Virus record (IMG/VR): IMGVR_UViG_3300024503_000015
Coordinates: 206,182 to 270,181 of that record
Length of the DNA stretch: 64,000 nt
Strand: one strand, 5' to 3'
A program made the translations under genes and the position numbers. The notes beneath the pieces are model-generated. The model was not told where the DNA came from, searched no databases, and saw only the letters and a list, made by a program, of their open reading frames with translations. Shown here in pieces: positions 30,326 through 53,042 of this stretch (position 1 is its first letter; each line of letters opens with the position of its first letter).

Positions 30326-30555
30326 GGTTGAAAGTTGTCCCTTCCTTTTGTATGCTTACTGATTTCGGCTAAGGTTGCCCTTAGCATTTGAATTTCCATT
30401 GCGGCTTCTTCTAACAAGTTAGCAATCTTGTCGGGCTTACCTTCTGTGACTGCTAACCTGCCAGGAATCTGCCTACGTATCTCTGCTCGTTTATACAAGC
30501 GGAACACTAGGCTTTGCTCTGCTACAGGCAAATGACTTTCATCTTCACATCTCAT
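30322..30555 (-). CDS. Hypothetical protein
   Basis: ATGA-coupled ORF. Confidence 0.6.
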   Translation of the reverse strand: MRCEDESHLPVAEQSLVFRLYKRAEIRRQIPGRLAVTEGKPDKIANLLEEAAMEIQMLRATLAEISKHTKGRDNFQP

Positions 30556-31436
30556 ACTGTCTCCATATAGTTGCGTACCCAAGATAAACGAGCTTGCTCG
30601 TCCATAGCAGTATACTCCTCAATGTTAGCACGGATAGCATCCACTAGTGGATAGTATTCTTCGTCTAAATTGTGCTTGATGTCTTTGTTCAAGTCTACTA
30701 ACTTGTCTGTGCGTGGATTGCGAGCAACCCACTTTGAAGTCAAGTAGTAAGGTGACTTGATCTTAGAACCAACGCCGTCCTTAGTATAGAATACAAAACC
30801 TTCGTGCTTAACAGTCTTTACTAGAGCCTTTAACTCGCCTACTGTAGTAGTAAAGATATCCACAGGGAGGCATCCAAGATGCTTGCCCAAAGGTTCTAGC
30901 GTAAACTTTTCGTAGTATAACTTACCGTTCCAGTCTTTGTGACGGAATCCGATAAAGTACAGTCCAGGTTCTTCAGGTATGATGTGTGGGTCAGTTGGAT
31001 GAACGCACTCAAACATAAAAGTAAAATCTGGGGCACATCTTAGTACATCACGGAAGTTATCAGTGATATATTCCTTTGCCATATCGACAAACTCGCCTGA
31101 AGTAGAACCTGTTGTTGAAACTAGGATATCTCCATTGTGCCAAGTCATAGCAACCATAAAGCCGTTAACTTTACGAAGTGCTGTGATCTCAGTATCGTCG
31201 GATAGCACTGGTGCTTCCTTTTCAATACCATAGTTATAGATCTTTGTGAATGGTCGTTGTACTACATTAAACTCAGAGTCTACAATAGTACCTCGACATT
31301 CGGCGATGTATTCGTTCCACAAGTTATCGTAGAACACTTTCTTCTTGTACTTTAGCACATAGATACCATCGCCACATTCTTTCATGTTGACTAGGTTACT
31401 AGTGTTTACATACTCCTTCAATTCATCTTTAAACAT
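30552..31436 (-). CDS. RNA ligase (T4 Rnl1-like)
   Basis: ECRG, PFTK, KVNG, FMFE, EGFV, KIKS.YY. Confidence 0.85.
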   Translation of the reverse strand: MFKDELKEYVNTSNLVNMKECGDGIYVLKYKKKVFYDNLWNEYIAECRGTIVDSEFNVVQRPFTKIYNYGIEKEAPVLSDDTEITALRKVNGFMVAMTWHNGDILVSTTGSTSGEFVDMAKEYITDNFRDVLRCAPDFTFMFECVHPTDPHIIPEEPGLYFIGFRHKDWNGKLYYEKFTLEPLGKHLGCLPVDIFTTTVGELKALVKTVKHEGFVFYTKDGVGSKIKSPYYLTSKWVARNPRTDKLVDLNKDIKHNLDEEYYPLVDAIRANIEEYTAMDEQARLSWVRNYMETV

Positions 31437-31977
31437 GATGACCCTTAATTTCGTTGTTTTTAATTCTGCCAATCGCATATTCCATTGACACAACAATCTC
31501 ACCGGTTGAATCCATACCTACATCGAATGCACGATACTTTTCTAATCCACTAACACCTCCGTGTAAGTGACCATGAAAATGTAATGCTCCTCTGTGCATT
31601 TGATCCCACTCAGCAATCGGATAGTGAAACATGACAATCTTGTGACCATCATATGTAATATCCAAATACTCGTGTACTTCTGCAAACGCACCACGGAACG
31701 TTTCGTCCATCAATGTCTTACGGTCATGATTTCCTCTAATTAAAATCTTTGTGCCATTCAAACGCTTTACCATTCTACCAGCATCACTACCTGACATGAA
31801 CGCTACATCGCCTAAGATGTAGACTGTGTCTTCAGGTTTGACTTTATGGTTCCATTCTTCGGCCATGGCGTTGTTCATATATGCAACGTCGTCTTTAAAT
31901 CGTGCTCTCGTCACTGGACAGAACTTCATGATGTTCTTATGTCCAAAGTGTAAGTCGCTTGTAATCCATGTTTTCAT
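31429..31977 (-). CDS. Metallophosphoesterase
   Basis: SDLHFGH, LGD, GNHD, HYP, HGHLH; promoter at 32002-32030. Confidence 0.9.
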   Translation of the reverse strand: MKTWITSDLHFGHKNIMKFCPVTRARFKDDVAYMNNAMAEEWNHKVKPEDTVYILGDVAFMSGSDAGRMVKRLNGTKILIRGNHDRKTLMDETFRGAFAEVHEYLDITYDGHKIVMFHYPIAEWDQMHRGALHFHGHLHGGVSGLEKYRAFDVGMDSTGEIVVSMEYAIGRIKNNEIKGHHV

Positions 31978-32057
31978 TTTTTCGCTCTTCTTTCTTGTTA
32001 TATTATACAGCCAAAAGAACGCCCTGTCAACTCTCGAAGACAGGGCAAATGTTGTTT

Positions 32058-32525
32058 TTATACAACGGGCTTGTATGTGCGCCAATCGTCGATGTTGGGC
32101 TTTTCGTCCGCATCGTAGGTCCAACCCAAGGCTCGCATCATTCTGTGCTTAACGAGCAGATTAGGGCTTCTAAACCGCCCTGTATCCTGAAAGCCCAGCA
32201 TTACGCCTACTTCGCATACAGCACCGCTACGACAAATTCCAGCAAAACAATGAACAACAACGTTCATTTTGTTATCCAAAGCGTGTTGTAAAAGAGCCAC
32301 AAGTTGATTGGCTTGTTCTTGACTACACTTCATTGCTTCGTCGTCTACGTGGTCGTTTTCCTCCACGTCCAAAAATTCAAAGTTATGAATTTCCTTGAAC
32401 TTATGGGCAGGAGTAGGACGCCAGCTCGCCGGGTCAACGATACTAATCAGCATACTATTTTCGCCTGCTTCGTGATGAAATCTTTTTGGGATATCATCGG
32501 CGGCTACATTTTCAATCCAAGGCAT
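32058..32525 (-). CDS. Cys-based (CX5R) phosphatase
   Basis: VHCFAGICRS. Confidence 0.85.
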   Translation of the reverse strand: MPWIENVAADDIPKRFHHEAGENSMLISIVDPASWRPTPAHKFKEIHNFEFLDVEENDHVDDEAMKCSQEQANQLVALLQHALDNKMNVVVHCFAGICRSGAVCEVGVMLGFQDTGRFRSPNLLVKHRMMRALGWTYDADEKPNIDDWRTYKPVV

Positions 32526-33541: not shown

Positions 33542-33616
33542 TGGTCCCGCTACTACGAATCGAACGTAGACTTACTCTTTAGGAGAGAGTCGTTCTATCC
33601 ATTGAACTATAGCGAG
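33542..33616 (-). tRNA. tRNA-Arg(CCT)
   Basis: Cloverleaf; ACTCT-CT CCT AA-AGAGT; CCA. Confidence 0.9.
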
Positions 33617-33626
33617 GGAGGGAATT

Positions 33627-33734
33627 TGGTGTGACCGGGAGGGTTCGAACCTCCAAGGACGGCATATCGCCTAGTCCCGACCCACGGAGTGTTTCACAAC
33701 AGTCCTGGAGCTCTGCCTATTCGCTCACGGTCAC
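33627..33734 (-). ncRNA. tRNA-like RNA with a multi-hairpin domain replacing the anticodon loop
   Basis: Acceptor GTGACCG/CGGTCAC-ACCA, D and T arms; AGGAC/GTCCT stem encloses about 41 nt; own promoter at 33741-33769. Confidence 0.7.
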
Positions 33735-33765
33735 ATACTAAGTATATAACCTTTTCAGCAGTTTG

Positions 33766-34206
33766 TCAACGGGTTATGAGGTATTCGTAGTTCACTGTGT
33801 TGTCGTTTTCTTGCAACACACAGGCACCATTTCTGATATGGAACTTGTAGGCCATTTCAGTTTTTGGGCTAAGTGTTACAAAACGATTAACAGTTGGGAA
33901 AAGTTCTTTTATTTGATCCACTACACCAAAAAGTAGCTCTGCGGCCGCACCCGGCGCATAACTCCAAATTGTATAGAAGATTGCTGTAGTTGGTTCTGTG
34001 GGTGTTTTAGCCAAATCTTCAACAGTTGTTGGCACAAAATCGTGCAGACTAACACAGACCATTGCACGTGGTTTTTCGCCTTCTACAGTGGTGGCGACAA
34101 ATCTGCTACCGCTAACACGAAATTCTTTGGGAATTTCTGGACGTACTGGATCATCCTTGATATAGTCAAGTAATGGATTAGTAGTTTCTCTGATTAATGT
34201 TAGCAT
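33766..34206 (-). CDS. Hypothetical protein (GNAT-like C-terminus)
   Basis: DDPVRP, FYTIWSY, VTLSP, FH..NGA; ATG 5 nt after TAAATA. Confidence 0.7.
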   Translation of the reverse strand: MLTLIRETTNPLLDYIKDDPVRPEIPKEFRVSGSRFVATTVEGEKPRAMVCVSLHDFVPTTVEDLAKTPTEPTTAIFYTIWSYAPGAAAELLFGVVDQIKELFPTVNRFVTLSPKTEMAYKFHIRNGACVLQENDNTVNYEYLITR

Positions 34207-34244
34207 ATAACTATTTAGCATTTAGTGGGCAGATTATGGTGTTA

Positions 34245-34319
34245 TGGTGGTAACGGTGAGATTCGAACTCACACCTTGCTCCGTATGAAGGAGGTGCACG
34301 ACCATTATGCTACGTTACC
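34245..34319 (-). tRNA. tRNA-CAT (Met or Ile2)
   Basis: CTCC-TT CAT AC-GGAG; CCA. Confidence 0.85.
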
Positions 34320-34322
34320 AGA

Positions 34323-34558
34323 TTATTAGTAAGATGTCCCGAGAGTTTTGGTTTGGGTAAGGCCATCCGACGGTGCGATTCGTCCCTCTCTTTGTCTAGC
34401 CCAACATGAAGTTCTTGTAGTCTCAATCCGCTCACCTTGCACCGGCGCTTGATACATATACTCTACAGCATTAAAGTTTATAACTTCAATTAACAAAAAC
34501 TTCCGATCTTTGTTAACTCCTTGCGGATGCTTTTAGAACCTTAACTACTTACTAATAA
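34323..34558 (-). ncRNA. Stem-enclosed structured RNA
   Basis: 11-bp terminal IR TTATTAGTAAG/CTTACTAATAA; internal hairpins. Confidence 0.5.
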
Positions 34559-34560
34559 AA

Positions 34561-34829
34561 GGGGTGGAGAGAGAAAGGCAAGTAATAGACTGGACAATGT
34601 ACAAGCGGGCTCTATAAAGATACCCTTAACAAGTCACAAGGCGCAAAGCACAGGGACCTGTATATTTCCAGTTAGCAACTCACAAAGTCGATTAATATAT
34701 AGAACTGGTTCACACAAGCACGAAACGTTTTCAAGACGTTTTGCCAGTAGTTGATGTTCGGTCTCTATAAGAGATCAAACCTTAGGCATGTAGCCTAAGT
34801 CTGTCTATCCTAATCTCCTTCTCTACTCC
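34561..34829 (-). ncRNA. Stem-enclosed RNA with repeated YUUGU motifs
   Basis: Terminal GGAGTAGAGA.../...TCTCCACCCC stem; about 8 (C/U/A)UUG(U/C) repeats. Confidence 0.5.
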
Positions 34830-34858
34830 AGGCTCGGGCTTTCGCCTTTGCCAAAACT

Positions 34859-34932
34859 TGGTTGCGGGACCTGGAATCGAACCAGGATCTAGAGCTTATG
34901 AGACTCTTGAGTTACCGTTTCTCTATCCCGCG
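34859..34932 (-). tRNA. tRNA-Met(CAT), initiator-like
   Basis: C1:A72 mismatch (CGCGGG...CCCGCAACCA), but lacks the three G-C anticodon-stem pairs. Confidence 0.85.
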
Positions 34933-34935
34933 ATA

Positions 34936-35072
34936 ACTTTATAGGTGCTCTCTGTTCGACTCGAACGAAACCTGCTGAGCTCCTTATCTTCCTGGCACTT
35001 TCGGTGGGTAGTCGACTTAGCACCTAACTCGTGTTATCCAGTGTAGTTCAGCTCAGAGAGCATTTATAAAGT
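34936..35072 (-). ncRNA. Long-stem RNA with T-loop-like hairpin
   Basis: About 19-bp terminal stem ACTTTATAAATGCTCTCTG/CAGAGAGCACCTATAAAGT; GTTCGAGTC loop. Confidence 0.55.
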
Positions 35073-35268
35073 GTCTAGCCACTCCCACCACAGGAGCCCT
35101 AAACCGAGCTGTTACTCTGTCCACTAGCCTTTCCATTTAGACGGTGCTGAGGTCCGCCTTTGTGATTTCTCAAGTCGCTTTAAACAAGCCTTGCGGTAGA
35201 TCCAATGCACCGAGCCATTAAGGTGTAGCAATTACCTAACTCTATCACGCTGAGTTAACGCGGGGTCT
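35073..35268 (-). ncRNA. Putative structured RNA
   Basis: Non-coding and GC-richer than the genome; several hairpins including CCGCAAGG. Confidence 0.45.
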
Positions 35269-35269
35269 G

Positions 35270-35842
35270 TTACAGTAAACCTTCTGCTTGCAGAACTGCT
35301 TCTGTTTTGTCAGACAATTGGATAGTTGTCTGAACATTTAACTCTAGGATTTCATCCTGAAGTTTTTGTTTCTGCTTTTTAGCAGTTGCCACTCTACGAC
35401 GGAATCCGTCTAGATCTTCACGAGTGAGCACACTAGTGTCTACTGTGTCGTTGTAGCCATAGATGCTACGACGGTTTTCGCTTTTGTCGTTACGGATCTT
35501 GTCCAAACGACCTGCTACAACCTTTGCGCTTTCGCGAACGGTCTTACTAGCCAATCCGTTGTAGAATTGGATTTGTTTTTCTAGATGTGCAACATCGGCC
35601 AATCTAGTGTCGATTCTAACTTCTGTGTTAGCACCGCTGACACTTTTACGAATCTCGTAAAGTGCTTCCACTAACGCATCTCTGCGTGTAAGGTTGTCGC
35701 AGAGTGTTCCTGCAACTTTGGAAATTTCTTGTTCCGCTTCTTGGAACTCGTTGATTTTTACTGTGGTCTCAAACTGGAAACCTTTGACGGTATCGTTGAT
35801 ACTGTTCTGAAGTGCATTTGCCTTACGTAGGGAGATATTCAT
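35270..35842 (-). CDS. Coiled-coil hypothetical protein
   Basis: Start MNISLRKANAL after AAGGA; helical. Confidence 0.75.
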   Translation of the reverse strand: MNISLRKANALQNSINDTVKGFQFETTVKINEFQEAEQEISKVAGTLCDNLTRRDALVEALYEIRKSVSGANTEVRIDTRLADVAHLEKQIQFYNGLASKTVRESAKVVAGRLDKIRNDKSENRRSIYGYNDTVDTSVLTREDLDGFRRRVATAKKQKQKLQDEILELNVQTTIQLSDKTEAVLQAEGLL

Positions 35843-35908
35843 TTGTTTTTCCTTTAATGTTTCTATTATACAATCTTTTAAATCTAAATCAATGCCTTTT
35901 GGCAAAAC

Positions 35909-35984
35909 TGGAGCGGGAGACGAGGTTCGAACTCGCGACATTTACCTTGGCAAGGTAATGCTCTACCAACTGAGCTACTCCCGC
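35909..35984 (-). tRNA. tRNA-Gly(GCC)
   Basis: Canonical cloverleaf; CCA. Confidence 0.95.
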
Positions 35985-36032
35985 ATATGAAGAACCTAAG
36001 GCAAAGTTTATAACTTATCCAAAGGCCATATA

Positions 36033-36108
36033 TGGTACACGGTACGGGAATCGAACCCGTCTTACTGACGTGAAAGGCCAGTGTCCTAAACCGATAGACG
36101 AACCGTGC
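36033..36108 (-). tRNA. tRNA-Glu(TTC)
   Basis: Canonical cloverleaf; CCA. Confidence 0.95.
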
Positions 36109-36114
36109 ATTACT

Positions 36115-36190
36115 TGGCTCCCCAGGGTGGGATCGAACCACCGACACCCTGATTAACAGTCAGGTGCTACTACCGCTGAGCTACTAGGGA
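36115..36190 (-). tRNA. tRNA-Asn(GTT)
   Basis: Canonical cloverleaf; CCA. Confidence 0.95.
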
Positions 36191-36197
36191 ATAAACT

Positions 36198-36272
36198 TGG
36201 TACCTGGTGACAGTTTCGAACTGCCGACCCTCTCGGTGTAAACGAGACGCTCTACCACTGAGCTAACCAGGC
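36198..36272 (-). tRNA. tRNA-Val(TAC)
   Basis: Canonical cloverleaf; CCA. Confidence 0.95.
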
Positions 36273-36282
36273 AAACTAACAT

Positions 36283-36359
<77 letters not shown>

Positions 36360-36364
36360 AATGA

Positions 36365-36440
36365 TGGAGCGGGAGGCGAGAGTTGAACTCGTCTATTTCA
36401 GTTTGGAAGACTGACGTGTAACCACAAACACTTCACCCGC
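36365..36440 (-). tRNA. tRNA-Gly(TCC)
   Basis: TCAGT-CT TCC AA-ACTGA; CCA. Confidence 0.9.
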
Positions 36441-36446
36441 ATATTT

Positions 36447-36530
36447 TGGTGCCCCAGGAGAGACTCGAACTCTCACGGCTCTCGCCACTGGCTTCTAAGA
36501 CCAGCGTGTCTACCATTCCACCACCAGGGC
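36447..36530 (-). tRNA. tRNA-Leu(TAG)
   Basis: Long variable arm; CCA. Confidence 0.95.
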
Positions 36531-36531
36531 A

Positions 36532-37335
36532 TTAACTGACAATACTATTTAAGTATTCCTGAATTGTCGTTGCAATTTTTTCTTGCACAGACAATTTAAT
36601 TTTTGCATTCTCACCATTAGCACTCATATACTGTTTTCCGTATTCAGTACAATCTATACCAGTGTGCATAAACTCTTTAAAAATTTCTGAGTTGTCAGGA
36701 TTAGGATCTCCAAACCTAACAGTCGTCCATTTAATATTTTGAGAATCTAAAAACTTAATTAACATATTGTAACCATTTCTATGTCTACGAATATGCCAAT
36801 CTTTGCTTTGACTTTTTTGAAAAGCAATACCGTTTAATCGCTTTTTATGAACTTCAATTGGATATCTATCTGGATTCCATTCTCCGTCTACATAATTTTC
36901 ACGTTCAAATACATATCGTTGATTGTTATATTTGAAACTGTGTGCTATATGACTAAACGTGTAATCTGTAACTAATACATGATCCGGTTTAGGATTCTCT
37001 GCTAGGTACTGTTTTAATCTTTTGTGATGACCTATAAAATGTCCACCGTTAATAGATATATTAACTACATTGGAAACATTTAAGAAATTAGGCCATGCGG
37101 CTTTTTGTTCTTCTTCCCATAGATAATGCCAAACAACATTTTCCATATTGCCATTGGGCATAGGTGTTGTAACATTGTTTTCTTTTCTATGTTTTAGATA
37201 CCATTTAAAAACACTTCTAAAATCATTATGGAAACGTAGACTCCAAGTCCTCGGAGCATCGTCGTTGACTATGTCACCAGCCAAACAATTATTGCCATTA
37301 CTTTGGCAATCTCCTAAAATTAAAAGTGTTTTCAT
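36532..37335 (-). CDS. Hypothetical protein (SGNH-like start) inside the tRNA array
   Basis: LLILGDCQS, NISINGG; AT-rich 267-aa ORF. Confidence 0.7.
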   Translation of the reverse strand: MKTLLILGDCQSNGNNCLAGDIVNDDAPRTWSLRFHNDFRSVFKWYLKHRKENNVTTPMPNGNMENVVWHYLWEEEQKAAWPNFLNVSNVVNISINGGHFIGHHKRLKQYLAENPKPDHVLVTDYTFSHIAHSFKYNNQRYVFERENYVDGEWNPDRYPIEVHKKRLNGIAFQKSQSKDWHIRRHRNGYNMLIKFLDSQNIKWTTVRFGDPNPDNSEIFKEFMHTGIDCTEYGKQYMSANGENAKIKLSVQEKIATTIQEYLNSIVS

Positions 37336-37349
37336 ATTAATAGTTATCT

Positions 37350-37426
37350 TGGCGCACCGTAGGGGACTTGAACCCCTGGCCTCCGACGTGACAGGCCGGC
37401 GCTCTGACCAACTGAGCTAACGGTGC
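37350..37426 (-). tRNA. tRNA-Asp(GTC)
   Basis: Canonical cloverleaf; CCA. Confidence 0.95.
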
Positions 37427-37431
37427 AAATT

Positions 37432-37511
37432 CTATTCTGAAACACACTAACCAACTACCAGAAGCATTTATAATGCCGTTATTCGGTTCGAGCTAATGTG
37501 TTTTAGAATAG
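37432..37511 (-). ncRNA. Stem-enclosed small RNA
   Basis: CTATTCTAAAACACATTAGC/GTTAGTGTGTTTCAGAATAG terminal stem. Confidence 0.5.
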
Positions 37512-38391
37512 TGCTAACGCTGAGATTATACGTTAGCCAATAGTGCCTCTAGCATTATAGTCAGCCTTGCGAGCCAACCTTCTCTAGACATCCACATAAG
37601 CCATTACTGTACCTATGTCCACTATCAGCATCGCCGTTTTTAAAGACAGGCAGTAGTCTTGTCGCCATATGCTATTCTACGCTATCTACTCCGTTGACCT
37701 TGCGAGCCATTCAGCGGCGCTAACCACTTACGAAACTTCCAGCATAAACAGATTTCACCTTGCGAGCTACGTCTGACTCGATTACCTTGCGGCTCGAGTA
37801 TTAGATGCTTTTCACATATGACCGAGGCAGTCTTTGCATTTTATAATCGATAGTTGGGATCGAACCAACAGTCCATTGCTTAAGAGGCAATTGCGTTACC
37901 ATTACGCTATATCAAACCTACCGCGATGAGCTGCCTCTGTTGCTCAATAACCTTTTGGATTACTGAATACAACTCACCACATACCTTTTGTCTCGCGGAC
38001 TACTCAGTGATATTTCACGATCAATGTCCTGCATCAAAACAGTCCACTAACCATTAATATTGCATACAAGCCCTTAGGAGCGACCCCTTGGACAAATACA
38101 CTACCCTTTCTCATACCAATTCGCAAGTTGGTTTTGTTAGGAAGTCAGCACCACCCGTTACTTTTCATGCACCCTGGTTCCCTTGCGGGCCAGTCGATAC
38201 ACATTCTTTCCCTAACACTTGCTTCATTGTTACATCCACCGGTCTTCTCAGTGAACGCTACCTCGCGGTAGTGAGCAGGCTTGTTTACATGAACCATTAC
38301 TGGCGGAGTTGCGTAGGCTTACCTCCTTTGGGTTGATCACTCAACTTATTCTTCGTCAACGGCGAACCGCCAACAGGATAATAAACTACCC
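37512..38391 (-). ncRNA. GOLLD-like giant ncRNA (~880 nt)
   Basis: No credible ORF; five CGCAAG tetraloop hairpins; lies in a tRNA cluster; nested tRNA; 3' hairpin GCTAACG-TATAATCTCAG-CGTTAGC. Confidence 0.7.
37845..37916 (-). tRNA. tRNA-Lys(CTT) nested in the GOLLD-like RNA, no CCA
   Basis: ATTGC-CT CTT AA-GCAAT; intact D and T arms. Confidence 0.75.
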
Positions 38392-38401
38392 TTAAATTTT
38401 T

Positions 38402-38570
38402 ACCATTAAAAAATAACATTACACCCTATGGGATGAAACGTATTTCTGAGTGGAGTTCGATTCTCCTCATAAGCCATTGTTCACGGTTTTCTCAGAAGGG
38501 TAAGATGGCCTTATCCTTCATAAGTCTATGCGTCCATAGACGATACCCGTCAATGCTATTTCTTAATGGT
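38402..38570 (-). ncRNA. Stem-enclosed structured RNA
   Basis: ACCATTAAGAAATAGCATT/AATGTTATTTTTTAATGGT; the stem begins with the tRNA-Tyr ACCA. Confidence 0.5.
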
Positions 38571-38652
38571 GGATGCGGCTGGAGTCGAACCAGCAGTGCC
38601 GTAAGGCGGCGGATTTACAGTCCACTGGGGTTACCAATTTTCCTACACATCC
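38567..38652 (-). tRNA. tRNA-Tyr(GTA)
   Basis: Long variable arm; CCA. Confidence 0.9.
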
Positions 38653-38703
38653 ATATCTGCTTGAAATTTTTAAAGAACTAGGTTAATTTCTTAACTAGTC
38701 TCT

Positions 38704-38732
38704 ATTGTATATGAACTTTAGAAACTAGTCAA
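38704..38732 (-). promoter_or_regulatory. Internal sigma70 promoter in the tRNA array
   Basis: TTGACT-N17-TACAAT. Confidence 0.65.
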
Positions 38733-38739
38733 GACATTT

Positions 38740-38834
38740 TGGCAGTGAGTAAGGGATTCGAACCCTTGATCCCCGTTTTTGCAGGAATGCCTTCTTAGCA
38801 GGAAGGTGCCTTCGACCAGCTCGGCCAACTCACT
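38740..38834 (-). tRNA. tRNA-Ser(GCT)
   Basis: Long variable arm; GCCA. Confidence 0.9.
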
Positions 38835-38842
38835 ATATTTGT

Positions 38843-38871
38843 ATTATACGATCAACTGTTAAACAAGTCAA
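38843..38871 (-). promoter_or_regulatory. Internal sigma70 promoter in the tRNA array
   Basis: TTGACT-N17-TATAAT. Confidence 0.75.
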
Positions 38872-38878
38872 CACCTTT

Positions 38879-38968
38879 TGGCCGAAGCGGTGAGATTCGA
38901 ACTCACGGACCCTTTCGGATCGTCTGTTTTCAAGACAGGTGCAATAAACCGGACTCTGCCACGCTTCG
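38879..38968 (-). tRNA. tRNA-Ser(TGA)
   Basis: Long variable arm; GCCA. Confidence 0.95.
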
Positions 38969-39014
38969 TTGTTTTACTTGTATAATTCGTTGTAGATAGA
39001 ATCTGCTACAAATG

Positions 39015-39092
39015 TGGTACCCCTGCTCCGATTCGAACGGAGAGAACTTCTCCTTTTGAGAGAGACGACTTTACCAATTTGTCCACAGGGGT
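39015..39092 (-). tRNA. tRNA-Leu(CAA), short variable arm
   Basis: TCTCT-CT CAA AA-GGAGA. Confidence 0.85.
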
Positions 39093-39097
39093 ATATC

Positions 39098-39171
39098 TGG
39101 TGCTCAAGGAAAGAATCGAACTTTCGATTGTGTCGTACCAAGACACTGGTATACCATTTACCTACAAGAGC
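39098..39171 (-). tRNA. tRNA-Thr(GGT)
   Basis: GTGTC-TT GGT AC-GACAC; two U:U mismatches in the acceptor stem. Confidence 0.85.
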
Positions 39172-39173
39172 CT

Positions 39174-39245
39174 TGGCGCCTCTGAGTAGATTCGAACTAC
39201 TATAACCTGGTTTAGAAGACCTGGCACTGCTCCATCAGCAGAGGC
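39174..39245 (-). tRNA. tRNA-Arg(TCT), reduced D arm
   Basis: Loop CT TCT AA; 72 nt; GCCA. Confidence 0.7.
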
Positions 39246-39246
39246 A

Positions 39247-39323
39247 TGGTACCCTTGGTTGGATTCGAACCTACACACAACGGATTTTAAATCCATTCGC
39301 ATTACCAATTAGCGTACAAGGGC
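39247..39323 (-). tRNA. tRNA-Leu(TAA), short variable arm
   Basis: ATGGA-TT TAA AA-TCCGT. Confidence 0.85.
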
Positions 39324-39330
39324 ATAATTA

Positions 39331-39406
39331 TGGTGCCGCCCCTTGGGATCGAACCAAGTTCCTCGGTGCTTCAAACCGGTGCAATGACCACATTTGCTAA
39401 AGCGGC
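39331..39406 (-). tRNA. tRNA-Phe(GAA)
   Basis: CGGT-TT GAA GC-ACCG. Confidence 0.9.
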
Positions 39407-39412
39407 GATATT

Positions 39413-39487
39413 TGGGGTGAAGCCGGGAATCGAACCCTGCCTTACTGTTTCACAGACAGCCGTGCGGACCACTACACTAGCAACACC
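39413..39487 (-). tRNA. tRNA-His(GTG)
   Basis: G-1:C73; anticodon GTG. Confidence 0.85.
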
Positions 39488-39489
39488 AT

Positions 39490-39566
39490 TGGCCGGCCCT
39501 GAGAGACTCGAACTCCCAACCTCCAGTTTCGAAGACTGGCACTCTAATCCATTGAGTTAAGGACCG
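39490..39566 (-). tRNA. tRNA-Arg(TCG)
   Basis: CCAGT-CT TCG AA-ACTGG; A20. Confidence 0.9.
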
Positions 39567-39573
39567 TTAAAAT

Positions 39574-39647
39574 TGGCAGGCCTACCAGGACTCGAACCTG
39601 GAACGACTGAGTCAAAGTCAGTTGTGTTACCATTACACCATAGGCCA
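39574..39647 (-). tRNA. tRNA-Gln(TTG)
   Basis: ACTGA-CT TTG AC-TCAGT. Confidence 0.95.
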
Positions 39648-39657
39648 ACAGATTGAA

Positions 39658-39870
39658 TTTGTAAGTAGTTGCCCCATCGTTATAGCAACCATTCACCCAT
39701 GTATATAAAGCCGGCTGGGACTCGGTACGTCACTTGGGATACTAGTCCAGTTAGCAACCAATCTGCAGGGATCTTCCGATCCCCCGGGAGTTGAACCCGT
39801 CCCCTTTTACTATTAAGGTAGTTCGAACTTACCTACAATAGCGTGACATTCTCTTGCTGACACTTACAAA
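39658..39870 (-). ncRNA. Stem-enclosed structured RNA with T-loop-like hairpins
   Basis: TTTGTAAGT/ACTTACAAA ends; GTTCGAAC and GGGTTCAACTCCC loops. Confidence 0.55.
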
Positions 39871-39873
39871 ACT

Positions 39874-39948
39874 TGGTGCCCCAGGATGGAATCGAACCAC
39901 CACACCCTGCTTACAAAACAGGACCTCTACCACTAAGGATACAAGGGC
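39874..39948 (-). tRNA. tRNA-Thr(TGT)
   Basis: Cloverleaf; CCA. Confidence 0.9.
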
Positions 39949-39953
39949 AAAAT

Positions 39954-40031
39954 TGGTCTCCACGGTACGATTCGAACGTACAGCCTCCTGACTCCAGATC
40001 AGGCCGTCTACCAGATTGACATTACGCAGAG
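39954..40031 (-). tRNA. Atypical tRNA-Pro(TGG)
   Basis: C1-G72, A73; loop TC TGG AG lacks U33. Confidence 0.65.
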
Positions 40032-40041
40032 ATAAAAATAA

Positions 40042-40117
40042 TTGCGACCGAAGGACTCGAACCTTCGCGGTAATCTAGAATGCCCCGGCAAGGCCGGTTA
40101 ACCCACCATTGTCGCAA
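40042..40117 (-). ncRNA. tRNA-like element without CCA
   Basis: TTGCGAC/GTCGCAA stem plus T arm GAAGG-TTCGAGT-CCTTC; no clear anticodon arm. Confidence 0.5.
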
Positions 40118-40120
40118 ATT

Positions 40121-40195
40121 TGGTGGAGGCCGAGGAAATCGAATCCTTCTAGACATCTTCCTTGCAAGGGAAGACCGTAGCCCACTACTGCCCCC
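40121..40195 (-). tRNA. tRNA-Ala(TGC), atypical D arm
   Basis: G3:U70; CTTCC-CT TGC AA-GGAAG. Confidence 0.75.
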
Positions 40196-40280
40196 AAATT
40201 GGTGTTAGTTTCTATACCACCCATTGAAACTAACAAACATTGAGAGAACATGGATGAACCCACAAGATCTCTATTTGCTC

Positions 40281-40355
40281 TGGTATAGCGTACGGGGATC
40301 GAACCCGCCTAGTCACCTTGAAAGGGTGATGACCTCCCCAGAAGTCGAACGCTAT
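40281..40355 (-). tRNA. tRNA-Glu(TTC), second copy
   Basis: TCACC-CT TTC AA-GGTGA. Confidence 0.85.
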
Positions 40356-40361
40356 GTAAAT

Positions 40362-40435
40362 TGGTTCCTGGACCGAGAATTGAACTCAGAATGACCGGTT
40401 ATCAGCCGATTGTTATACCATTTAACTATCCAGGA
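40362..40435 (-). tRNA. tRNA-Ile(GAT)
   Basis: ATCGG-CT GAT AA-CCGGT. Confidence 0.9.
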
Positions 40436-40442
40436 ATAATAC

Positions 40443-40520
40443 TATACAAAAAGAAACTAACGACAATGCGCTATGCACCCAGAGTCTATAGTTCCTGGCT
40501 GTGGTTAGTTTGTTTTTATA
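40443..40520 (-). ncRNA. Stem-enclosed small RNA
   Basis: TATAAAAACAAACTAAC/GTTAGTTTCTTTTTGTA. Confidence 0.45.
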
Positions 40521-40523
40521 CAC

Positions 40524-40622
40524 TACCATATGGAAGCACTCTTATGCCTTTTTCGTCATAAGATGGTGGCCCGTCCTTACTACTGACGCTATGCGACCAG
40601 TTAAGAATGCTTTCATATGGTA
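40524..40622 (-). ncRNA. Stem-enclosed small RNA
   Basis: TACCATATGAAAGCATTCTTA/TAAGAGTGCTTCCATATGGTA; overlaps the tRNA-Lys CCA. Confidence 0.5.
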
Positions 40623-40692
40623 GGGGCACAGAGAATCGAACTCTGATTTACGGGTTAAAAGCCCGCTACTTTAACCATTAAGTTATACCCCC
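40618..40692 (-). tRNA. tRNA-Lys(TTT)
   Basis: GCGGG-CT TTT AA-CCCGT. Confidence 0.9.
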
Positions 40693-40695
40693 ATA

Positions 40696-40771
40696 TGGTC
40701 CCTGCTGTGAGATTCGAACTCACACCTCATTGATTAAGAGTCAAGTGCGCTACCATTGACGCTAAACAGGG
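40696..40771 (-). tRNA. tRNA-Lys(CTT)
   Basis: TTGA-CT CTT AA-TCAA. Confidence 0.9.
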
Positions 40772-40833
40772 TTGTACGTATTGATTTGATTTTACGTGCC
40801 AACCCTAGACCATACGGGAGATCTAGAGTGACA

Positions 40834-40854
40834 CTAACGTTTAGCACGTTTCAT
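40834..40854 (-). CDS. Minigene MKRAKR-TAG
   Basis: SD AAGGAG 6 nt upstream; stop followed by a long hairpin. Confidence 0.45.
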   Translation of the reverse strand: MKRAKR

Positions 40855-40866
40855 GCTACTCTCCTT

Positions 40867-40929
40867 TTAATATTTTTTCAAAACTTGATACAACACGAAC
40901 ATTATAACTAACACTACAAGTACTGCCAT
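40867..40929 (-). CDS. 20-aa single-TM peptide
   Basis: SD AAGGAG; MAVLVVLVIMFVLYQVLKKY. Confidence 0.5.
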   Translation of the reverse strand: MAVLVVLVIMFVLYQVLKKY

Positions 40930-40942
40930 AATATTCTCCTTA

Positions 40943-41032
40943 TGGTCCCCCGTTGAGGAATCGAACCTCATCCTGGACCTTATCTAGATTAATCGGTTAT
41001 AAGCCGACCTGCTCTCCATGAGCTAACGGGGG
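40943..41032 (-). tRNA. tRNA-Ile(TAT) with long variable region
   Basis: GTCGG-CT TAT AA-CCGAT; about 20-nt extra arm. Confidence 0.8.
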
Positions 41033-41040
41033 ATATAACC

Positions 41041-41118
41041 TGGAGCAACGGGTCAGATTTGAACTGACGGTTTTACGGATTTGCAATCCGTTGCATTGGG
41101 CCTCTCTGCCACCGTTGC
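41041..41118 (-). tRNA. tRNA-Cys(GCA)
   Basis: U73; anticodon GCA. Confidence 0.9.
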
Positions 41119-41123
41119 ATTAT

Positions 41124-41198
41124 TGGCGTACCCCCAGGGACTCGAACCCCGACTAGCAGTTTTGGAGACTGTCGTGCTGCCATTAACACTAGGGATAC
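41124..41198 (-). tRNA. tRNA-Trp(CCA)
   Basis: CAGT-CT CCA AA-ACTG. Confidence 0.9.
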
Positions 41199-46321: not shown

Positions 46322-46395
46322 TGGTGCGCTAGACAGGAATCGAACCTGCTATCGGGAGTTTAGAAGTCCCTGCCTATCCATTGAGCTTCAAGCGC
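46322..46395 (-). tRNA. Atypical tRNA: amber (CTA) or Arg(TCT) with expanded loop
   Basis: GGGA-C TT CTA AA C-TCCC; Arg-type D loop GGATA; CCA. Confidence 0.7.
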
Positions 46396-52027: not shown

Positions 52028-52130
52028 GTGATCTTTCTATGAAATAAAACTGCGATACTGTGTATTATAGGCTCGGACAGGGCATCTGTCAATGTGTTTG
52101 GTAAAATAAAAAAGGGCCCGAAGGCCCTTT

Positions 52131-52460
52131 GGTTGTTTGGGTTACAAGGTAAGTCCTACCCCGGAGTTGCAGTTTCTTAGGCTGCTACTAGACCATTGTC
52201 GGCTGTGAAGCCTTCAACAGTGAAGTACTCAAATGTAGATGCGTTTGCATTTACTAGTTTTGCTTGATTTACGGTCATCGCCTACCGTGTTGCCGTCTCT
52301 ACTATCTACCCCTGTCGAAACCATGGCAGGCCCATCATAAAAACACAATACCAAAGTAAATTTACAATGAATACCAAAGTAAATTTATGTCCTTATGGTG
52401 GACCTGGCGGGAGTCGAACCCGCGTCCAGAAGTCCTTCGCTTTGAAGGGATTACAACAAT
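52131..52460 (-). ncRNA. ssrA: Two-piece (circularly permuted) tmRNA
   Basis: Acceptor piece ...GGGTTCGACTCCCGCCAGGTCCACCA (ends 52396) precedes coding piece GGGCCTG...TTCGAC (starts 52333). Tag ANASTFEYFTVEGFTADNGLVAA* at 52177-52248. Terminator follows. Confidence 0.9.
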
Positions 52461-52463
52461 TCT

Positions 52464-53042
52464 TTAAACGCCTGCCTTTGCTAATGTGCCAAATATCCAA
52501 GGTTTTGGATCTAAGTCAATTGTCCAAGATGTCGGTTCATTTCTCATATCTTTTTTGTACACAATATTTATTTGGTCGTGTGTTAGTTTGACTAAGAAGC
52601 CGTCTGTTAATTGTTTTAGATTAGCCTTAACTGTTGCGTAATCTACAAAGGCAACAGCGAATGTTCCTTTAATTTGGACTATCATTAAATGATTAAAAAC
52701 TTTGTCTAGTGTAGTTCTTTGATTCTTACTTTCGTAAACATTTTTTAATTTAAGACTGATTGTCTTTTTAGGAGTTCCTGACTTTGCGTAGAACAAAGGT
52801 TCGTTGCCAGTTTTAACTTCTACGTCGCCATTGGTCCAATCGGTAAATTTTATATCGTAATCGCGAACGTCAGTCCACTCGATGTTCTTTTTATGATTAG
52901 ATAATTGCATTGCCGCAATAATGAATTTTTCTTTCATCATTCGATTTGTGGATTCATTTAATACTGTCTGATGACAGATGTTATTACAAGCATCTGAAAA
53001 CTTGTCAATATCTACCCAATCTAAAAATTCATTGTACTGCAT
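52464..53042 (-). CDS. Possible PD-(D/E)XK nuclease-like protein
   Basis: YD...DVEVKT; AT-rich. Confidence 0.5.
   Translation of the reverse strand: MQYNEFLDWVDIDKFSDACNNICHQTVLNESTNRMMKEKFIIAAMQLSNHKKNIEWTDVRDYDIKFTDWTNGDVEVKTGNEPLFYAKSGTPKKTISLKLKNVYESKNQRTTLDKVFNHLMIVQIKGTFAVAFVDYATVKANLKQLTDGFLVKLTHDQINIVYKKDMRNEPTSWTIDLDPKPWIFGTLAKAGV

What the first reader, a model, noticed from the sequence alone, without database searches (positions are those of the whole stretch)
33627..33769. tRNA-like RNA whose anticodon loop is replaced by a three-hairpin domain
This 108-nt RNA has a perfect acceptor stem with ACCA, a D arm and a T arm. Its 'anticodon stem' AGGAC/GUCCU closes about 41 nt that can form three mini-hairpins (UGUU/AACA, UCCG/CGGG, GGC/GCC), and there is almost no variable loop. 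Its own sigma70 promoter would start at about the mature 5' end. Inference: a non-decoding tRNA mimic (decoy or scaffold), or an intron-like insertion processed by the nearby RNA ligase.
Basis: partly seen in the sequence, partly recalled or inferred. Interest (0 to 1): 0.68.

Follow-up and report, generated by a model that had tools for sequence, protein, structure and literature searches.

The report
Anticodon-less tRNA-Leu mimic of jumbo phages
A giant river-water phage encodes a conserved small RNA, under its own promoter, that looks like a leucine tRNA whose anticodon arm has become a plain hairpin, so it probably cannot read codons and must do something else.

Summary
The 108-nt RNA (window 33627-33734, minus strand) and its promoter are real.

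- **Family:** I found 47 distinct homologues in uncultivated phage contigs, 50-99% identical. Five genomes or records checked, one of them a complete 364-kb phage genome, each hold one copy.
- **Fold:** the shared structure is a class-II (long-variable-arm) cloverleaf: acceptor stem, 3-bp D stem with an 11-nt loop, a variable hairpin where the anticodon arm should be, a second conserved hairpin in the variable-arm position, a T arm, then A73 and usually CCA.
- **No decoding:** loops of the anticodon-position hairpin are 3-6 nt (often GNRA or CCAUA), never 7, and none is conserved.
- **Origin:** a covariance model of the family scores tRNA-Leu genes best among real tRNAs, including T4 tRNA-Leu. 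All the E. coli LeuRS determinants listed in a review are kept.
- **Promoter:** a sigma-70-type promoter ending 6-7 nt before G1 is visible upstream of nearly all of the 44 homologues inspected.
- **Databases:** no Rfam family matches, and no GenBank phage record matches by blastn.
- **Function:** untested. I favour a leucylatable, non-decoding mimic acting as a decoy or sponge.
- **Splicing:** an intron reading is not supported.

The parts
33741..33769 (-). Sigma-70-type promoter: TTGACA (33769-33764), 17-nt spacer, TATACT (33746-33741). The -10 element ends 6 nt before G1 of the RNA.
   Evidence: 11 of 12 consensus matches. An equivalent TTGNNN-17-TATAAT is visible at the same distance upstream of nearly all of the 44 homologues inspected.
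33627..33734 (-). The 108-nt tRNA-Leu-like RNA, from G1 (33734) to the encoded CCA end (33627).
   Evidence: Covariance model R1 scores it 96 bits. It is a single copy in the 270-kb record.
33728..33734 (-). Acceptor stem, 5' strand GUGACCG. It pairs with 33631-33637.
   Evidence: 100% of cells paired in 47 sequences, and 5 of 7 pairs show changes on both sides.
33709..33725 (-). D arm: 3-bp stem AGC/GCU and an 11-nt loop GAAUAGGCAGA of tRNA-Leu type (A14, A15, G18, G19, A20a).
   Evidence: Stem invariant in 47 of 47. A14, A15, G19 and A21(col) are also invariant. The loop nearly matches the phage tRNA-Leu D loops AAAUUGGUAAA.
33682..33708 (-). Arm 3, in the anticodon-arm position: hairpin CCAGGA-C-UGUU-GUGA-AACA-C-UCC-G-UGG with a GNRA tetraloop and no anticodon loop.
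   Evidence: A single hairpin in 44 of 44 members, 17-27 nt long, with 35 distinct sequences and loops of 3-6 nt. The basal pair C27-G53 is invariant, and 28:52 covaries between CG and UA.
33679..33681 (-). Three-nt linker GUC. Its first G (column 54) is invariant.
33656..33678 (-). Arm 4, in the long-variable-arm position: GGGAC-UA-GGC-GAUAU-GCC-GUCCU.
   Evidence: Basal 5-bp stem is 94.9% paired, and 60:80 covaries between GC (26) and AU (21). A single hairpin in 44 of 44 members, 23-27 nt, with 31 distinct sequences.
33655..33655 (-). Invariant U between arm 4 and the T stem, equivalent to U48, the Levitt-pair partner of A15.
   Evidence: Column 84 is invariant in 47 of 47.
33638..33654 (-). 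T arm GGAGG-UUCGAAC-CCUCC.
   Evidence: 100% of cells paired, and 2 pairs covary. The T loop UUC.A is canonical.
33627..33637 (-). Acceptor stem 3' strand CGGUCAC, discriminator A73 and the encoded CCA.
   Evidence: A73 is invariant in 47 of 47, and CCA is encoded in 41 of 47.
33542..33616 (-). Context: tRNA-Arg(CCU) begins 10 nt after the RNA's CCA. It is probably co-transcribed, and RNase P cleavage at its 5' end would free the 3' side of the mimic.
   Evidence: The same neighbour follows the RNA in most class-1 loci.

Best explanation
This is a gene for a non-decoding tRNA mimic derived from a class-II tRNA-Leu.

**Shown**
- It belongs to a conserved family of uncultivated, mostly jumbo phages. 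Five genomes or records checked each hold one copy.
- It has its own sigma-70-type promoter, placed so that transcription should start at or within a nucleotide or two of G1.
- The shared fold is a five-way tRNA junction: acceptor stem, D arm, arm 3, arm 4 and T arm.
- Arm 3 is a variable-length hairpin capped by tri-, tetra- or penta-loops. It has no 7-nt loop and no conserved triplet, so the RNA has no recognisable way of reading a codon.
- The parts that stay constant are the acceptor/T minihelix, the D/T elbow, U8:A14, A15:U48, A20a and A73.

**Inferred**
- The 3' end is released by processing of the downstream tRNA-Arg or mRNA, and ends in CCA.
- Bacterial LeuRS ignores the anticodon. It needs exactly the elements that are conserved here, so the RNA is probably bound by host LeuRS and probably leucylated.
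- Because it cannot decode, I think it most likely acts as an abundant decoy or sponge. The target would be a host factor that recognises the tRNA-Leu body or the CCA end, for example a tRNA-directed defence enzyme, or LeuRS itself. Use as a translation substrate is unlikely.
For: - **Family and structure:** 47 distinct homologues, 50-99% identical. 97.2% of cells are paired, 116 cells are compensatory, and 0 of 500 shuffles match.
- **No anticodon:** arm-3 loops are 3-6 nt in 44 of 44 members. The Rfam tRNA model gives no hit, and default ARAGORN gives none.
- **tRNA-Leu origin:** among real tRNAs, 17 of the 18 best matches to model R1 are tRNA-Leu. In T4, tRNA-Leu scores 46.9 bits against at most 24.5 for any other tRNA. 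In the window's own genome the best are tRNA-Leu(UAA) at 36.6 bits and tRNA-Tyr at 35.6 bits.
- **LeuRS determinants:** A73, U8, A14, A15, U48, G19, A20a and the T-loop residues are invariant. Review PMC9976931 lists A73, A15-U48, G18G19, A20a and the D/T-loop contacts as the E. coli leucine identity set. It also reports that tRNA-Leu lacking the anticodon arm and variable arm is still charged.
- **Promoter:** it ends 6-7 nt before G1 in nearly all of the 44 homologues inspected.
- **Copy number:** one copy in each of five further genomes or records, including a 100%-complete 364-kb phage.
- **RNA libraries:** contigs from riverine metatranscriptome runs cover the RNA unspliced. In 3 of the 4 runs laid, the contig over it has 5-20-fold higher depth than the contig over the genes downstream.
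Against: - No direct evidence exists for a discrete small RNA, for its ends, for aminoacylation or for any partner.
- The RNA-library data are contigs only. They cannot show transcript ends or strand, and may include DNA.
- The hosts are unknown, so LeuRS rules are extrapolated from E. coli and A. aeolicus.
- No LeuRS or L/F-transferase gene was found in the 270-kb record, which is about 71% complete.
- No protein gene is linked to the RNA across both genomic contexts.
- There is no terminator after the RNA. It is usually followed within 10-45 nt by a tRNA or by an ORF with a ribosome-binding site, which also fits a leader or processing role.
- The acceptor-stem sequence is more conserved than LeuRS would require.
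Confidence: 0.55

Rival explanations
1. It is a tRNA-like leader or punctuation element. Its job would be to sit at the 5' end of a transcription unit and be cut off by tRNA-processing enzymes, so setting or protecting the 5' end of the downstream tRNA-Arg or mRNA. It would have no role as a free RNA.
For: The promoter starts at about G1, and no terminator follows. The RNA is followed within 10-45 nt by tRNA-Arg (class 1) or by an ORF with a ribosome-binding site: the 72-aa protein, or the 64-aa histone-H1-like protein of class 2.
Against: Processing signals need only the acceptor/T minihelix. Here A73, the encoded CCA, A15:U48, A20a, the whole D arm and the base of arm 4 are invariant or covarying over 47 variants. 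The downstream gene differs between lineages while the RNA stays the same.
Confidence: 0.17
2. It is a dedicated amino-acid carrier. Leu-charged mimic would feed a non-ribosomal aminoacyl-tRNA-dependent transferase (of the L/F-transferase, Fem/GNAT or cyclodipeptide-synthase kind) without competing in decoding.
For: The LeuRS determinants are retained and there is no anticodon. In 26 of 65 loci, a highly conserved 151-aa GNAT-fold protein is encoded directly upstream.
Against: The GNAT resembles the malonyl-CoA decarboxylase catalytic domain, not Fem or L/F-transferases. It is absent from most class-2 neighbourhoods. No aat homologue is present in the record.
Confidence: 0.12
3. It is an interrupted tRNA gene. 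Part of the middle region would be an intron, removed and resealed by the nearby RNA ligase and phosphatases to give a decoding tRNA.
For: An Rnl1-like ligase, a metallophosphoesterase and a Cys-phosphatase lie 1-3 kb downstream. The window's tRNA array lacks tRNA-Ala. Relaxed ARAGORN can force a tRNA-Pro reading with a 22-nt intron.
Against: Across the homologues no conserved anticodon loop remains in any register, and only the basal pairs of arms 3 and 4 are conserved. G3-C70 rules out Ala identity. RNA-library contigs show no joint in the RNA. The ligase is near the RNA in only 8 of 65 loci. ARAGORN's occasional calls disagree with each other: Pro-UGG, Pro-GGG and two 4-nt 'anticodons'.
Confidence: 0.03
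4. It is the RNA partner of an RNA-repair or quality-control ribonucleoprotein, in the manner of Y RNA/YrlA with Ro and RtcB. It would act as a scaffold for the neighbouring ligase and phosphatase cluster.
For: It has a tRNA-like body and lies near RNA-repair-type genes in class-1 phages. Jumbo phages are reported to carry Ro/TROVE proteins with a tRNA-like partner (PMC7824862).
Against: No Rfam Y-RNA or YrlA match appears even at E<=10. The ends form an open acceptor stem with CCA rather than a Ro-binding stem. The repair genes are not linked to the RNA in class-2 loci. I did not search for a Ro gene.
Confidence: 0.05
5. It is a decaying tRNA-Leu pseudogene with no function.
For: It derives from a tRNA and lies at the edge of a tRNA array.
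Against: There are 47 variants down to 50% identity with 116 compensatory cells. The promoter is conserved, 30 columns are invariant, and each genome checked holds a single copy across two gene contexts.
Confidence: 0.01

Closest known systems
Bacterial and phage tRNA-Leu (class-II tRNA)
   Same: Both have a 7-bp acceptor stem, a 3-bp D stem with an 11-nt AAAUUGGYAAA-type loop, a long extra arm, a canonical T arm, A73 and CCA. tRNA-Leu genes are the best non-self matches to the family model.
   Different: The mimic has no 5-bp anticodon stem with a 7-nt loop and no anticodon. Its arm 4 is 23-27 nt with an internal loop, much longer than Leu variable arms. It scores 76-110 bits against its own model, while true tRNA-Leu genes score 26-47. 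The Rfam tRNA model does not detect it.
Phage T4 species 1 RNA (rnaC), a small stable RNA of the T4 tRNA cluster
   Same: Both are phage-encoded and lie in the tRNA cluster close to tRNA-Arg. In my fold, T4 rnaC has an acceptor-like stem, two internal hairpins and a perfect T arm CCGGG-UUCGAAU-CCCGG, with no anticodon. The T4 record annotates no function for it.
   Different: The two share no significant sequence or model similarity (12.5 bits, E=0.025). rnaC is 139 nt, has no D arm, has U-U mismatches in its acceptor stem and has no encoded CCA. It lies at the 3' end of a tRNA transcript rather than behind its own promoter.
tRNA-like domain of tmRNA
   Same: Both are aminoacylatable tRNA mimics without an anticodon. 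A permuted tmRNA is also encoded in this window.
   Different: The mimic has G3-C70, not the G3:U70 alanine determinant. It has no mRNA-like reading frame and no pseudoknots, and it keeps a full D arm. It is of Leu type, not Ala type.
YrlA / bacterial Y RNAs (tRNA-like partners of Ro)
   Same: Both are non-decoding RNAs with a tRNA-like D/T elbow, and both are associated with RNA-repair gene neighbourhoods.
   Different: From my own knowledge, in YrlA the 5' and 3' ends form the Ro-binding stem and the acceptor-like helix is closed. Here the acceptor stem is open and ends in ACCA. There is no Rfam hit.
Bacillus cereus tRNA-Other (pseudo-tRNA)
   Same: Both are tRNA-derived RNAs that do not function in translation yet have a cellular role (PMC3399842, abstract seen).
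   Different: tRNA-Other is chromosomal and, from my own knowledge, keeps a cloverleaf with an anticodon arm. This RNA is phage-borne, class-II shaped and has lost the anticodon loop.

Membership tests
Canonical tRNA (Rfam RF00005) | Scores at or above the family gathering threshold (29 bits). | tested here: not met
   No RF00005 match over 33627-33734, even at E<=10. The adjacent tRNA-Arg scores 61 bits.
Canonical tRNA (Rfam RF00005) | A 5-bp anticodon stem closing a 7-nt loop with U33 and an anticodon. | tested here: not met
   Arm 3 is a 17-27-nt hairpin with 3-6-nt loops in 44 of 44 members, and no loop residue is conserved.
Canonical tRNA (Rfam RF00005) | A 7-bp acceptor stem, a D arm with G18G19, a T arm with the UUCRA loop, a discriminator and CCA. 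| tested here: met
   All are present and either covarying or invariant.
tRNA-Leu (bacterial class II) | The LeuRS identity set: A73, U8:A14, A15:U48, G18G19, A20a and the D/T-loop tertiary pairs. | tested here: met
   All the corresponding columns are invariant, or nearly so for G18, in 47 sequences. The list of determinants comes from PMC9976931. Actual charging was not tested.
tRNA-Leu (bacterial class II) | A Leu anticodon (NAG or YAA). | tested here: not met
   There is no anticodon loop at all.
tRNA-Leu (bacterial class II) | Closest relatives by profile are tRNA-Leu genes. | tested here: met
   17 of the top 18 tRNA matches to R1 are tRNA-Leu. T4 tRNA-Leu scores 46.9 bits.
Intron-containing tRNA gene | Conserved exon sequence that restores an anticodon stem-loop once a variable intron is removed, or a spliced RNA form. 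| tested here: not met
   No conserved anticodon-loop residues exist. RNA-library contigs have no joint in the RNA, although contigs can miss rare forms.
tmRNA | A G3:U70 alanine determinant, a tag reading frame and pseudoknots. | tested here: not met
   G3-C70 is invariant. ARAGORN and Rfam tmRNA models hit only 52107-52549.
Y RNA / YrlA | A Ro-binding stem formed by the two termini, and a match to the Rfam models. | tested here: not met
   No Rfam match at E<=10. The termini form an acceptor stem with a free ACCA end.
Y RNA / YrlA | A co-encoded Ro/TROVE protein. | not tested
   No Ro profile was searched in the genome.
T4 species 1 RNA (rnaC) | Sequence or profile similarity to T4 rnaC. | tested here: not met
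   R1 scores rnaC 12.5 bits, E=0.025. The resemblance is in architecture only.

The most novel reading that the evidence does not exclude
Phages carry a purpose-built leucine-tRNA look-alike that host LeuRS charges but the ribosome cannot use. It would work as an RNA anti-defence decoy against tRNA-Leu- or CCA-end-directed immune enzymes, or as a private Leu donor or LeuRS sponge. That would be a new class of phage counter-measure made from a tRNA, and possibly the long-sought kind of role for T4's species 1 RNA.
Probability: 0.3. Interest if true: 0.85.

Novelty: new variant of a known kind. Interest (0 to 1): 0.62.

Why it matters
Phage tRNA genes are now known to be weapons against tRNA-cleaving defences. 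A conserved phage tRNA that has deliberately lost its anticodon, while keeping every synthetase determinant, points to a use of tRNA shape outside decoding.

It gives a well-defined family to test: 47 variants with a clear fold and a promoter. The tests are leucylation without decoding, binding to tRNA-directed toxins, and effects on host LeuRS.

It also offers a modern comparison for the unexplained small stable RNAs of the T4 tRNA cluster.

On the practical side, the family is missed by Rfam, and ARAGORN either misses it or mis-calls it as tRNA-Pro or an undetermined tRNA. A covariance model would improve annotation of jumbo-phage genomes.

Tried and rejected
the AGGAC/GUCCU helix pairs in only 40.7% of family cells, and UCCG/CGGG is replaced by the arm-3 and arm-4 pairings.
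- **Intron reading:** ARAGORN with introns gave nothing at default settings. At a relaxed threshold it gave only a tRNA-Pro(CGG) with a 22-nt intron. ARAGORN's calls on a few homologues disagree with each other.
- **Rfam:** neither the gathering threshold nor E<=10 gave any relevant family.
- **GenBank phage records:** blastn with three family members gave no match. tblastn with the GNAT protein found only Pelagibacter phage Mosig at 36% identity.
- **Scan of 185,579 prokaryote genomes:** Only one real hit was recovered, on a 6-kb contig of a Crocinitomicaceae MAG. Occurrence in bacterial genomes is therefore not excluded.
- **Protein partner:** no gene is shared by both genomic contexts.
  - The upstream 151-aa protein is a GNAT fold nearest to malonyl-CoA decarboxylase.
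  - The 155-aa protein is a DSPc Cys-phosphatase.
  - The 72-aa protein has no annotation.
- **LeuRS and L/F-transferase genes:** none in the phage record.
- **Literature:** four full-text searches found no description of this RNA. One search call failed on a term that was too short.
- **Expression:** only contigs were available, so transcript ends and strand could not be read.

Full report
**What is at the coordinates.**
- The window is the last 64 kb of a 270-kb IMG/VR virus record, estimated about 71% complete. It carries 31 tRNA genes, a GOLLD RNA and a permuted tmRNA, all on the minus strand.
- On that strand, 33734->33627 reads GUGACCG-UG-AGC-GAAUAGGCAGA-GCU-[53 nt]-U-GGAGG-UUCGAAC-CCUCC-CGGUCAC-ACCA.
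- Upstream lies TTGACA, a 17-nt spacer and TATACT, ending 6 nt before G1.
- The sequence-level observation is therefore correct.
- ARAGORN does not call it. The Rfam tRNA model does not call it either, even at E<=10 in a 400-nt search.

**Homologues.**
- The protein encoded just upstream (151 aa) retrieved 80 related viral loci, many with a homologous RNA directly downstream.
- A degenerate pattern for the 5' half found 81 viral contigs.
- After removing an unrelated repeat found in bacterial genomes, 44 distinct RNAs remained.
- A covariance model built from them (R1) found three more divergent members with other acceptor sequences.
- The 47 sequences are 50-99% identical.
- Each of five further genomes or records searched whole holds exactly one copy. 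One of them is a 100%-complete 364-kb phage genome. The window's own record also has one copy.
- No member matches any of 50,697 GenBank phage records by blastn.

**The conserved fold.**
- Folding the middle region of every member gives two hairpins, not a closed three-hairpin domain.
- The family structure has these parts:

| Part | Detail |
|---|---|
| Acceptor stem | 7 bp |
| D stem | 3 bp, with an 11-nt loop |
| Arm 3 | basal pairs at alignment columns 27-29/51-53 |
| Linker | 3 nt, starting with an invariant G |
| Arm 4 | basal 5 bp at columns 57-61/79-83, then an internal loop, a 3-4-bp distal stem and a tri- to hexaloop |
| Junction base | one invariant U |
| T arm | canonical |

- This structure is 97.2% paired. 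It has 116 compensatory cells, 11 of 23 pairs changed on both sides, and no shuffle or slid register comes close.
- For the window copy alone, the minimum-energy fold does use that helix. Its 93-95%-identical relatives L007 and L008 adopt the family fold. L007 carries an A->G and U->C double change that keeps the arm-3 pairing.
- The order of helices and the linker lengths are those of a class-II tRNA. Arm 3 sits where the anticodon arm belongs and arm 4 where the long variable arm belongs. The model's alignment to T4 tRNA-Leu maps them the same way.

**Why it cannot decode.**
- Arm 3 is a single hairpin of 17-27 nt in 44 of 44 members (35 distinct sequences).
- Its loops are GNRA tetraloops in 14 members, CCAUA in 10 and other 3-6-nt loops in the rest. 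None is 7 nt long.
- Only the basal pairs are conserved.
- Arm 4's distal part is also free to vary.
- Nothing resembling a conserved U33-anticodon-R37 exists in any register. This also removes the intron reading, because an intron would leave conserved exon residues behind.
- Contigs from four riverine metatranscriptome libraries cover the RNA colinearly, with no joint in it.

**What it derives from.**
- Among genuine tRNAs in 42 sources, 17 of the 18 best matches to R1 are tRNA-Leu. The exception is a tRNA-Tyr.
- In phage T4, an unrelated test case, tRNA-Leu scores 46.9 bits against at most 24.5 for the other seven tRNAs.
- The D arm is nearly the tRNA-Leu D arm: AAAUUGGCAAA against AAAUUGGUAAA.
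- Invariant in all 47 sequences are U8, A14, A15, G19, the A after C20 (A20a), the single U before the T stem (U48), the T-loop UUC, and A73.
- Review PMC9976931 lists A73, A15-U48, G18G19, A20a and the D/T-loop contacts as the E. coli leucine identity set. It says the anticodon and variable arm are not needed. It also reports that tRNA-Leu lacking both arms is still charged, unless A73 or the D/T interaction is destroyed.
- The inference, not tested here, is that bacterial LeuRS would bind and probably leucylate this RNA.

**Expression signals and context.**
- A TTGACA-like and TATAAT-like pair with 17-nt spacing ends 6-7 nt before G1 in nearly all of the 44 homologues inspected. The RNA is therefore probably a primary transcript starting at its mature 5' end.
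- CCA is encoded in 41 of 47 members.
- No terminator follows the RNA.
- There are two gene contexts:
  - Class 1 (this window): GNAT-fold protein, then the RNA, then tRNA-Arg(CCU), then a 72-aa protein, with a DSPc Cys-phosphatase, a metallophosphoesterase and an Rnl1-like ligase further on.
  - Class 2: a divergent radical-SAM gene, then the RNA, then a 64-aa histone-H1-like protein, with no tRNAs nearby.
- No protein gene accompanies the RNA in both contexts. The ligase lies within 4 kb in only 8 of 65 loci.
- Six riverine metatranscriptome runs hold the region.
- In three of the four runs laid, the contig over the RNA has 5-20-fold higher depth than the contig over the genes downstream. 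This fits transcription but cannot resolve a discrete small RNA.

**Mechanism proposed.**
- Shown: a conserved gene, one copy in each genome checked, promoter-equipped, encoding a tRNA-Leu-shaped RNA without an anticodon.
- Inferred: it matures to a CCA end and is recognised (and likely charged) by LeuRS, but is invisible to codons. It would then act off the ribosome.
- I rank the possible roles as follows:
  1. A decoy or sponge for a host factor that recognises the tRNA-Leu body or CCA end. Many anti-phage systems attack tRNAs, and phage tRNAs are known counter-measures (the preprint 'Viruses encode tRNA and anti-retron to evade bacterial immunity', listed; defence review PMC13434031).
  2. 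A leader or processing element.
  3. A private Leu donor.
- The record encodes no LeuRS or L/F-transferase.

**Comparison with known RNAs.**
- It works like other non-decoding tRNA mimics: the tmRNA tRNA-like domain, YrlA and B. cereus tRNA-Other. It fails the defining features of each (see the membership table).
- The nearest phage analogue is T4 species 1 RNA (rnaC), which the T4 record annotates in the tRNA cluster close to tRNA-Arg.
- In my fold, rnaC has an acceptor-like stem, two hairpins and a perfect T arm.
- There is no significant similarity between the two (12.5 bits), and rnaC lacks a D arm.
- I found no paper describing the present family in four full-text searches. That library is incomplete, so prior description cannot be excluded.

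**Verdict.** The RNA is real and conserved. The proposed fold and the intron idea do not. It is a new family: a new variant of the known kind 'tRNA mimic'. Its function is open.

Noticed in passing
window 34497-35270 (- strand), especially 34545-34858: About 770 nt without an ORF of 50 aa or more, with tRNA-Met (34859-34932) in the middle. Both flanks are 76-84% identical in related phages whose neighbouring GNAT protein is only 63-78% identical. The 3' block folds with z = -3.1 into a multibranch closed by a long-range helix. There is no Rfam hit at E<=1. Metatranscriptome contigs here reach depth 340-1600, against 12-26 for neighbouring genes. This is a candidate new structured RNA beside a tRNA.
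   Followed up: partly
window 37517-37980 (- strand): GOLLD RNA (Rfam 207 bits) with tRNA-Lys(CUU) (37844-37917) embedded inside it.
   Followed up: no
window 52107-52549 (- strand): Permuted (two-piece) tmRNA, best matched by the betaproteobacterial and permuted models. The tag peptide is ANASTFEYFTVEGFTADNGLVAA. This may hint at the host group.
   Followed up: no
window 46322-46395 (- strand): Amber-suppressor-type tRNA(CUA), which ARAGORN labels 'Pyl'. TAG ends only 4 of 75 long ORFs. Reading TAG through does not lengthen the longest ORFs, so there is no sign of recoding.
   Followed up: partly
window 40943-41032 (- strand); also L095, L122, L133, L140, L128, L111: tRNA-Ile(UAU) of 90-95 nt carrying a long extra arm. 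This is unusual for an Ile tRNA and is conserved across these phages.
   Followed up: no
window 30552-32525 (- strand): An RNA-repair-like cluster: an Rnl1-type RNA ligase (316 aa, KxNG motif), a metallophosphoesterase and a DSPc Cys-phosphatase (HCxxGxxRS). The phosphatase family has more than 2,500 close relatives in metagenomes.
   Followed up: partly
window 33766-34221 (- strand): A 151-aa protein that is highly conserved (at least 60% identity in 40 phage loci). AlphaFold pLDDT is 92.5. It is a stand-alone GNAT fold, closest to the catalytic domain of malonyl-CoA decarboxylase. It matches no PHROG or NCBIfam family.
   Followed up: yes
window 33542-41198: The 30-gene tRNA array covers 19 amino acids but has no tRNA-Ala. 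Related phages do carry tRNA-Ala(UGC) in the corresponding arrays.
   Followed up: no
L163-L282 (genome contigs), e.g. L167, L222: A dispersed repeat beginning GTGAGCGTAAGCGAAYAGGAAACGCTCTAG occurs dozens of times in Acidisoma cellulosilyticum and in one proteobacterial MAG. It matched my search pattern by chance and is unrelated to the RNA.
   Followed up: no
L286 (phage T4, NC_000866 70908-71046): T4 rnaC (species 1 RNA) folds with z = -4.6 into an acceptor-like stem, a long hairpin, a second hairpin and a canonical T arm. No Rfam family covers it at its gathering threshold.
   Followed up: partly
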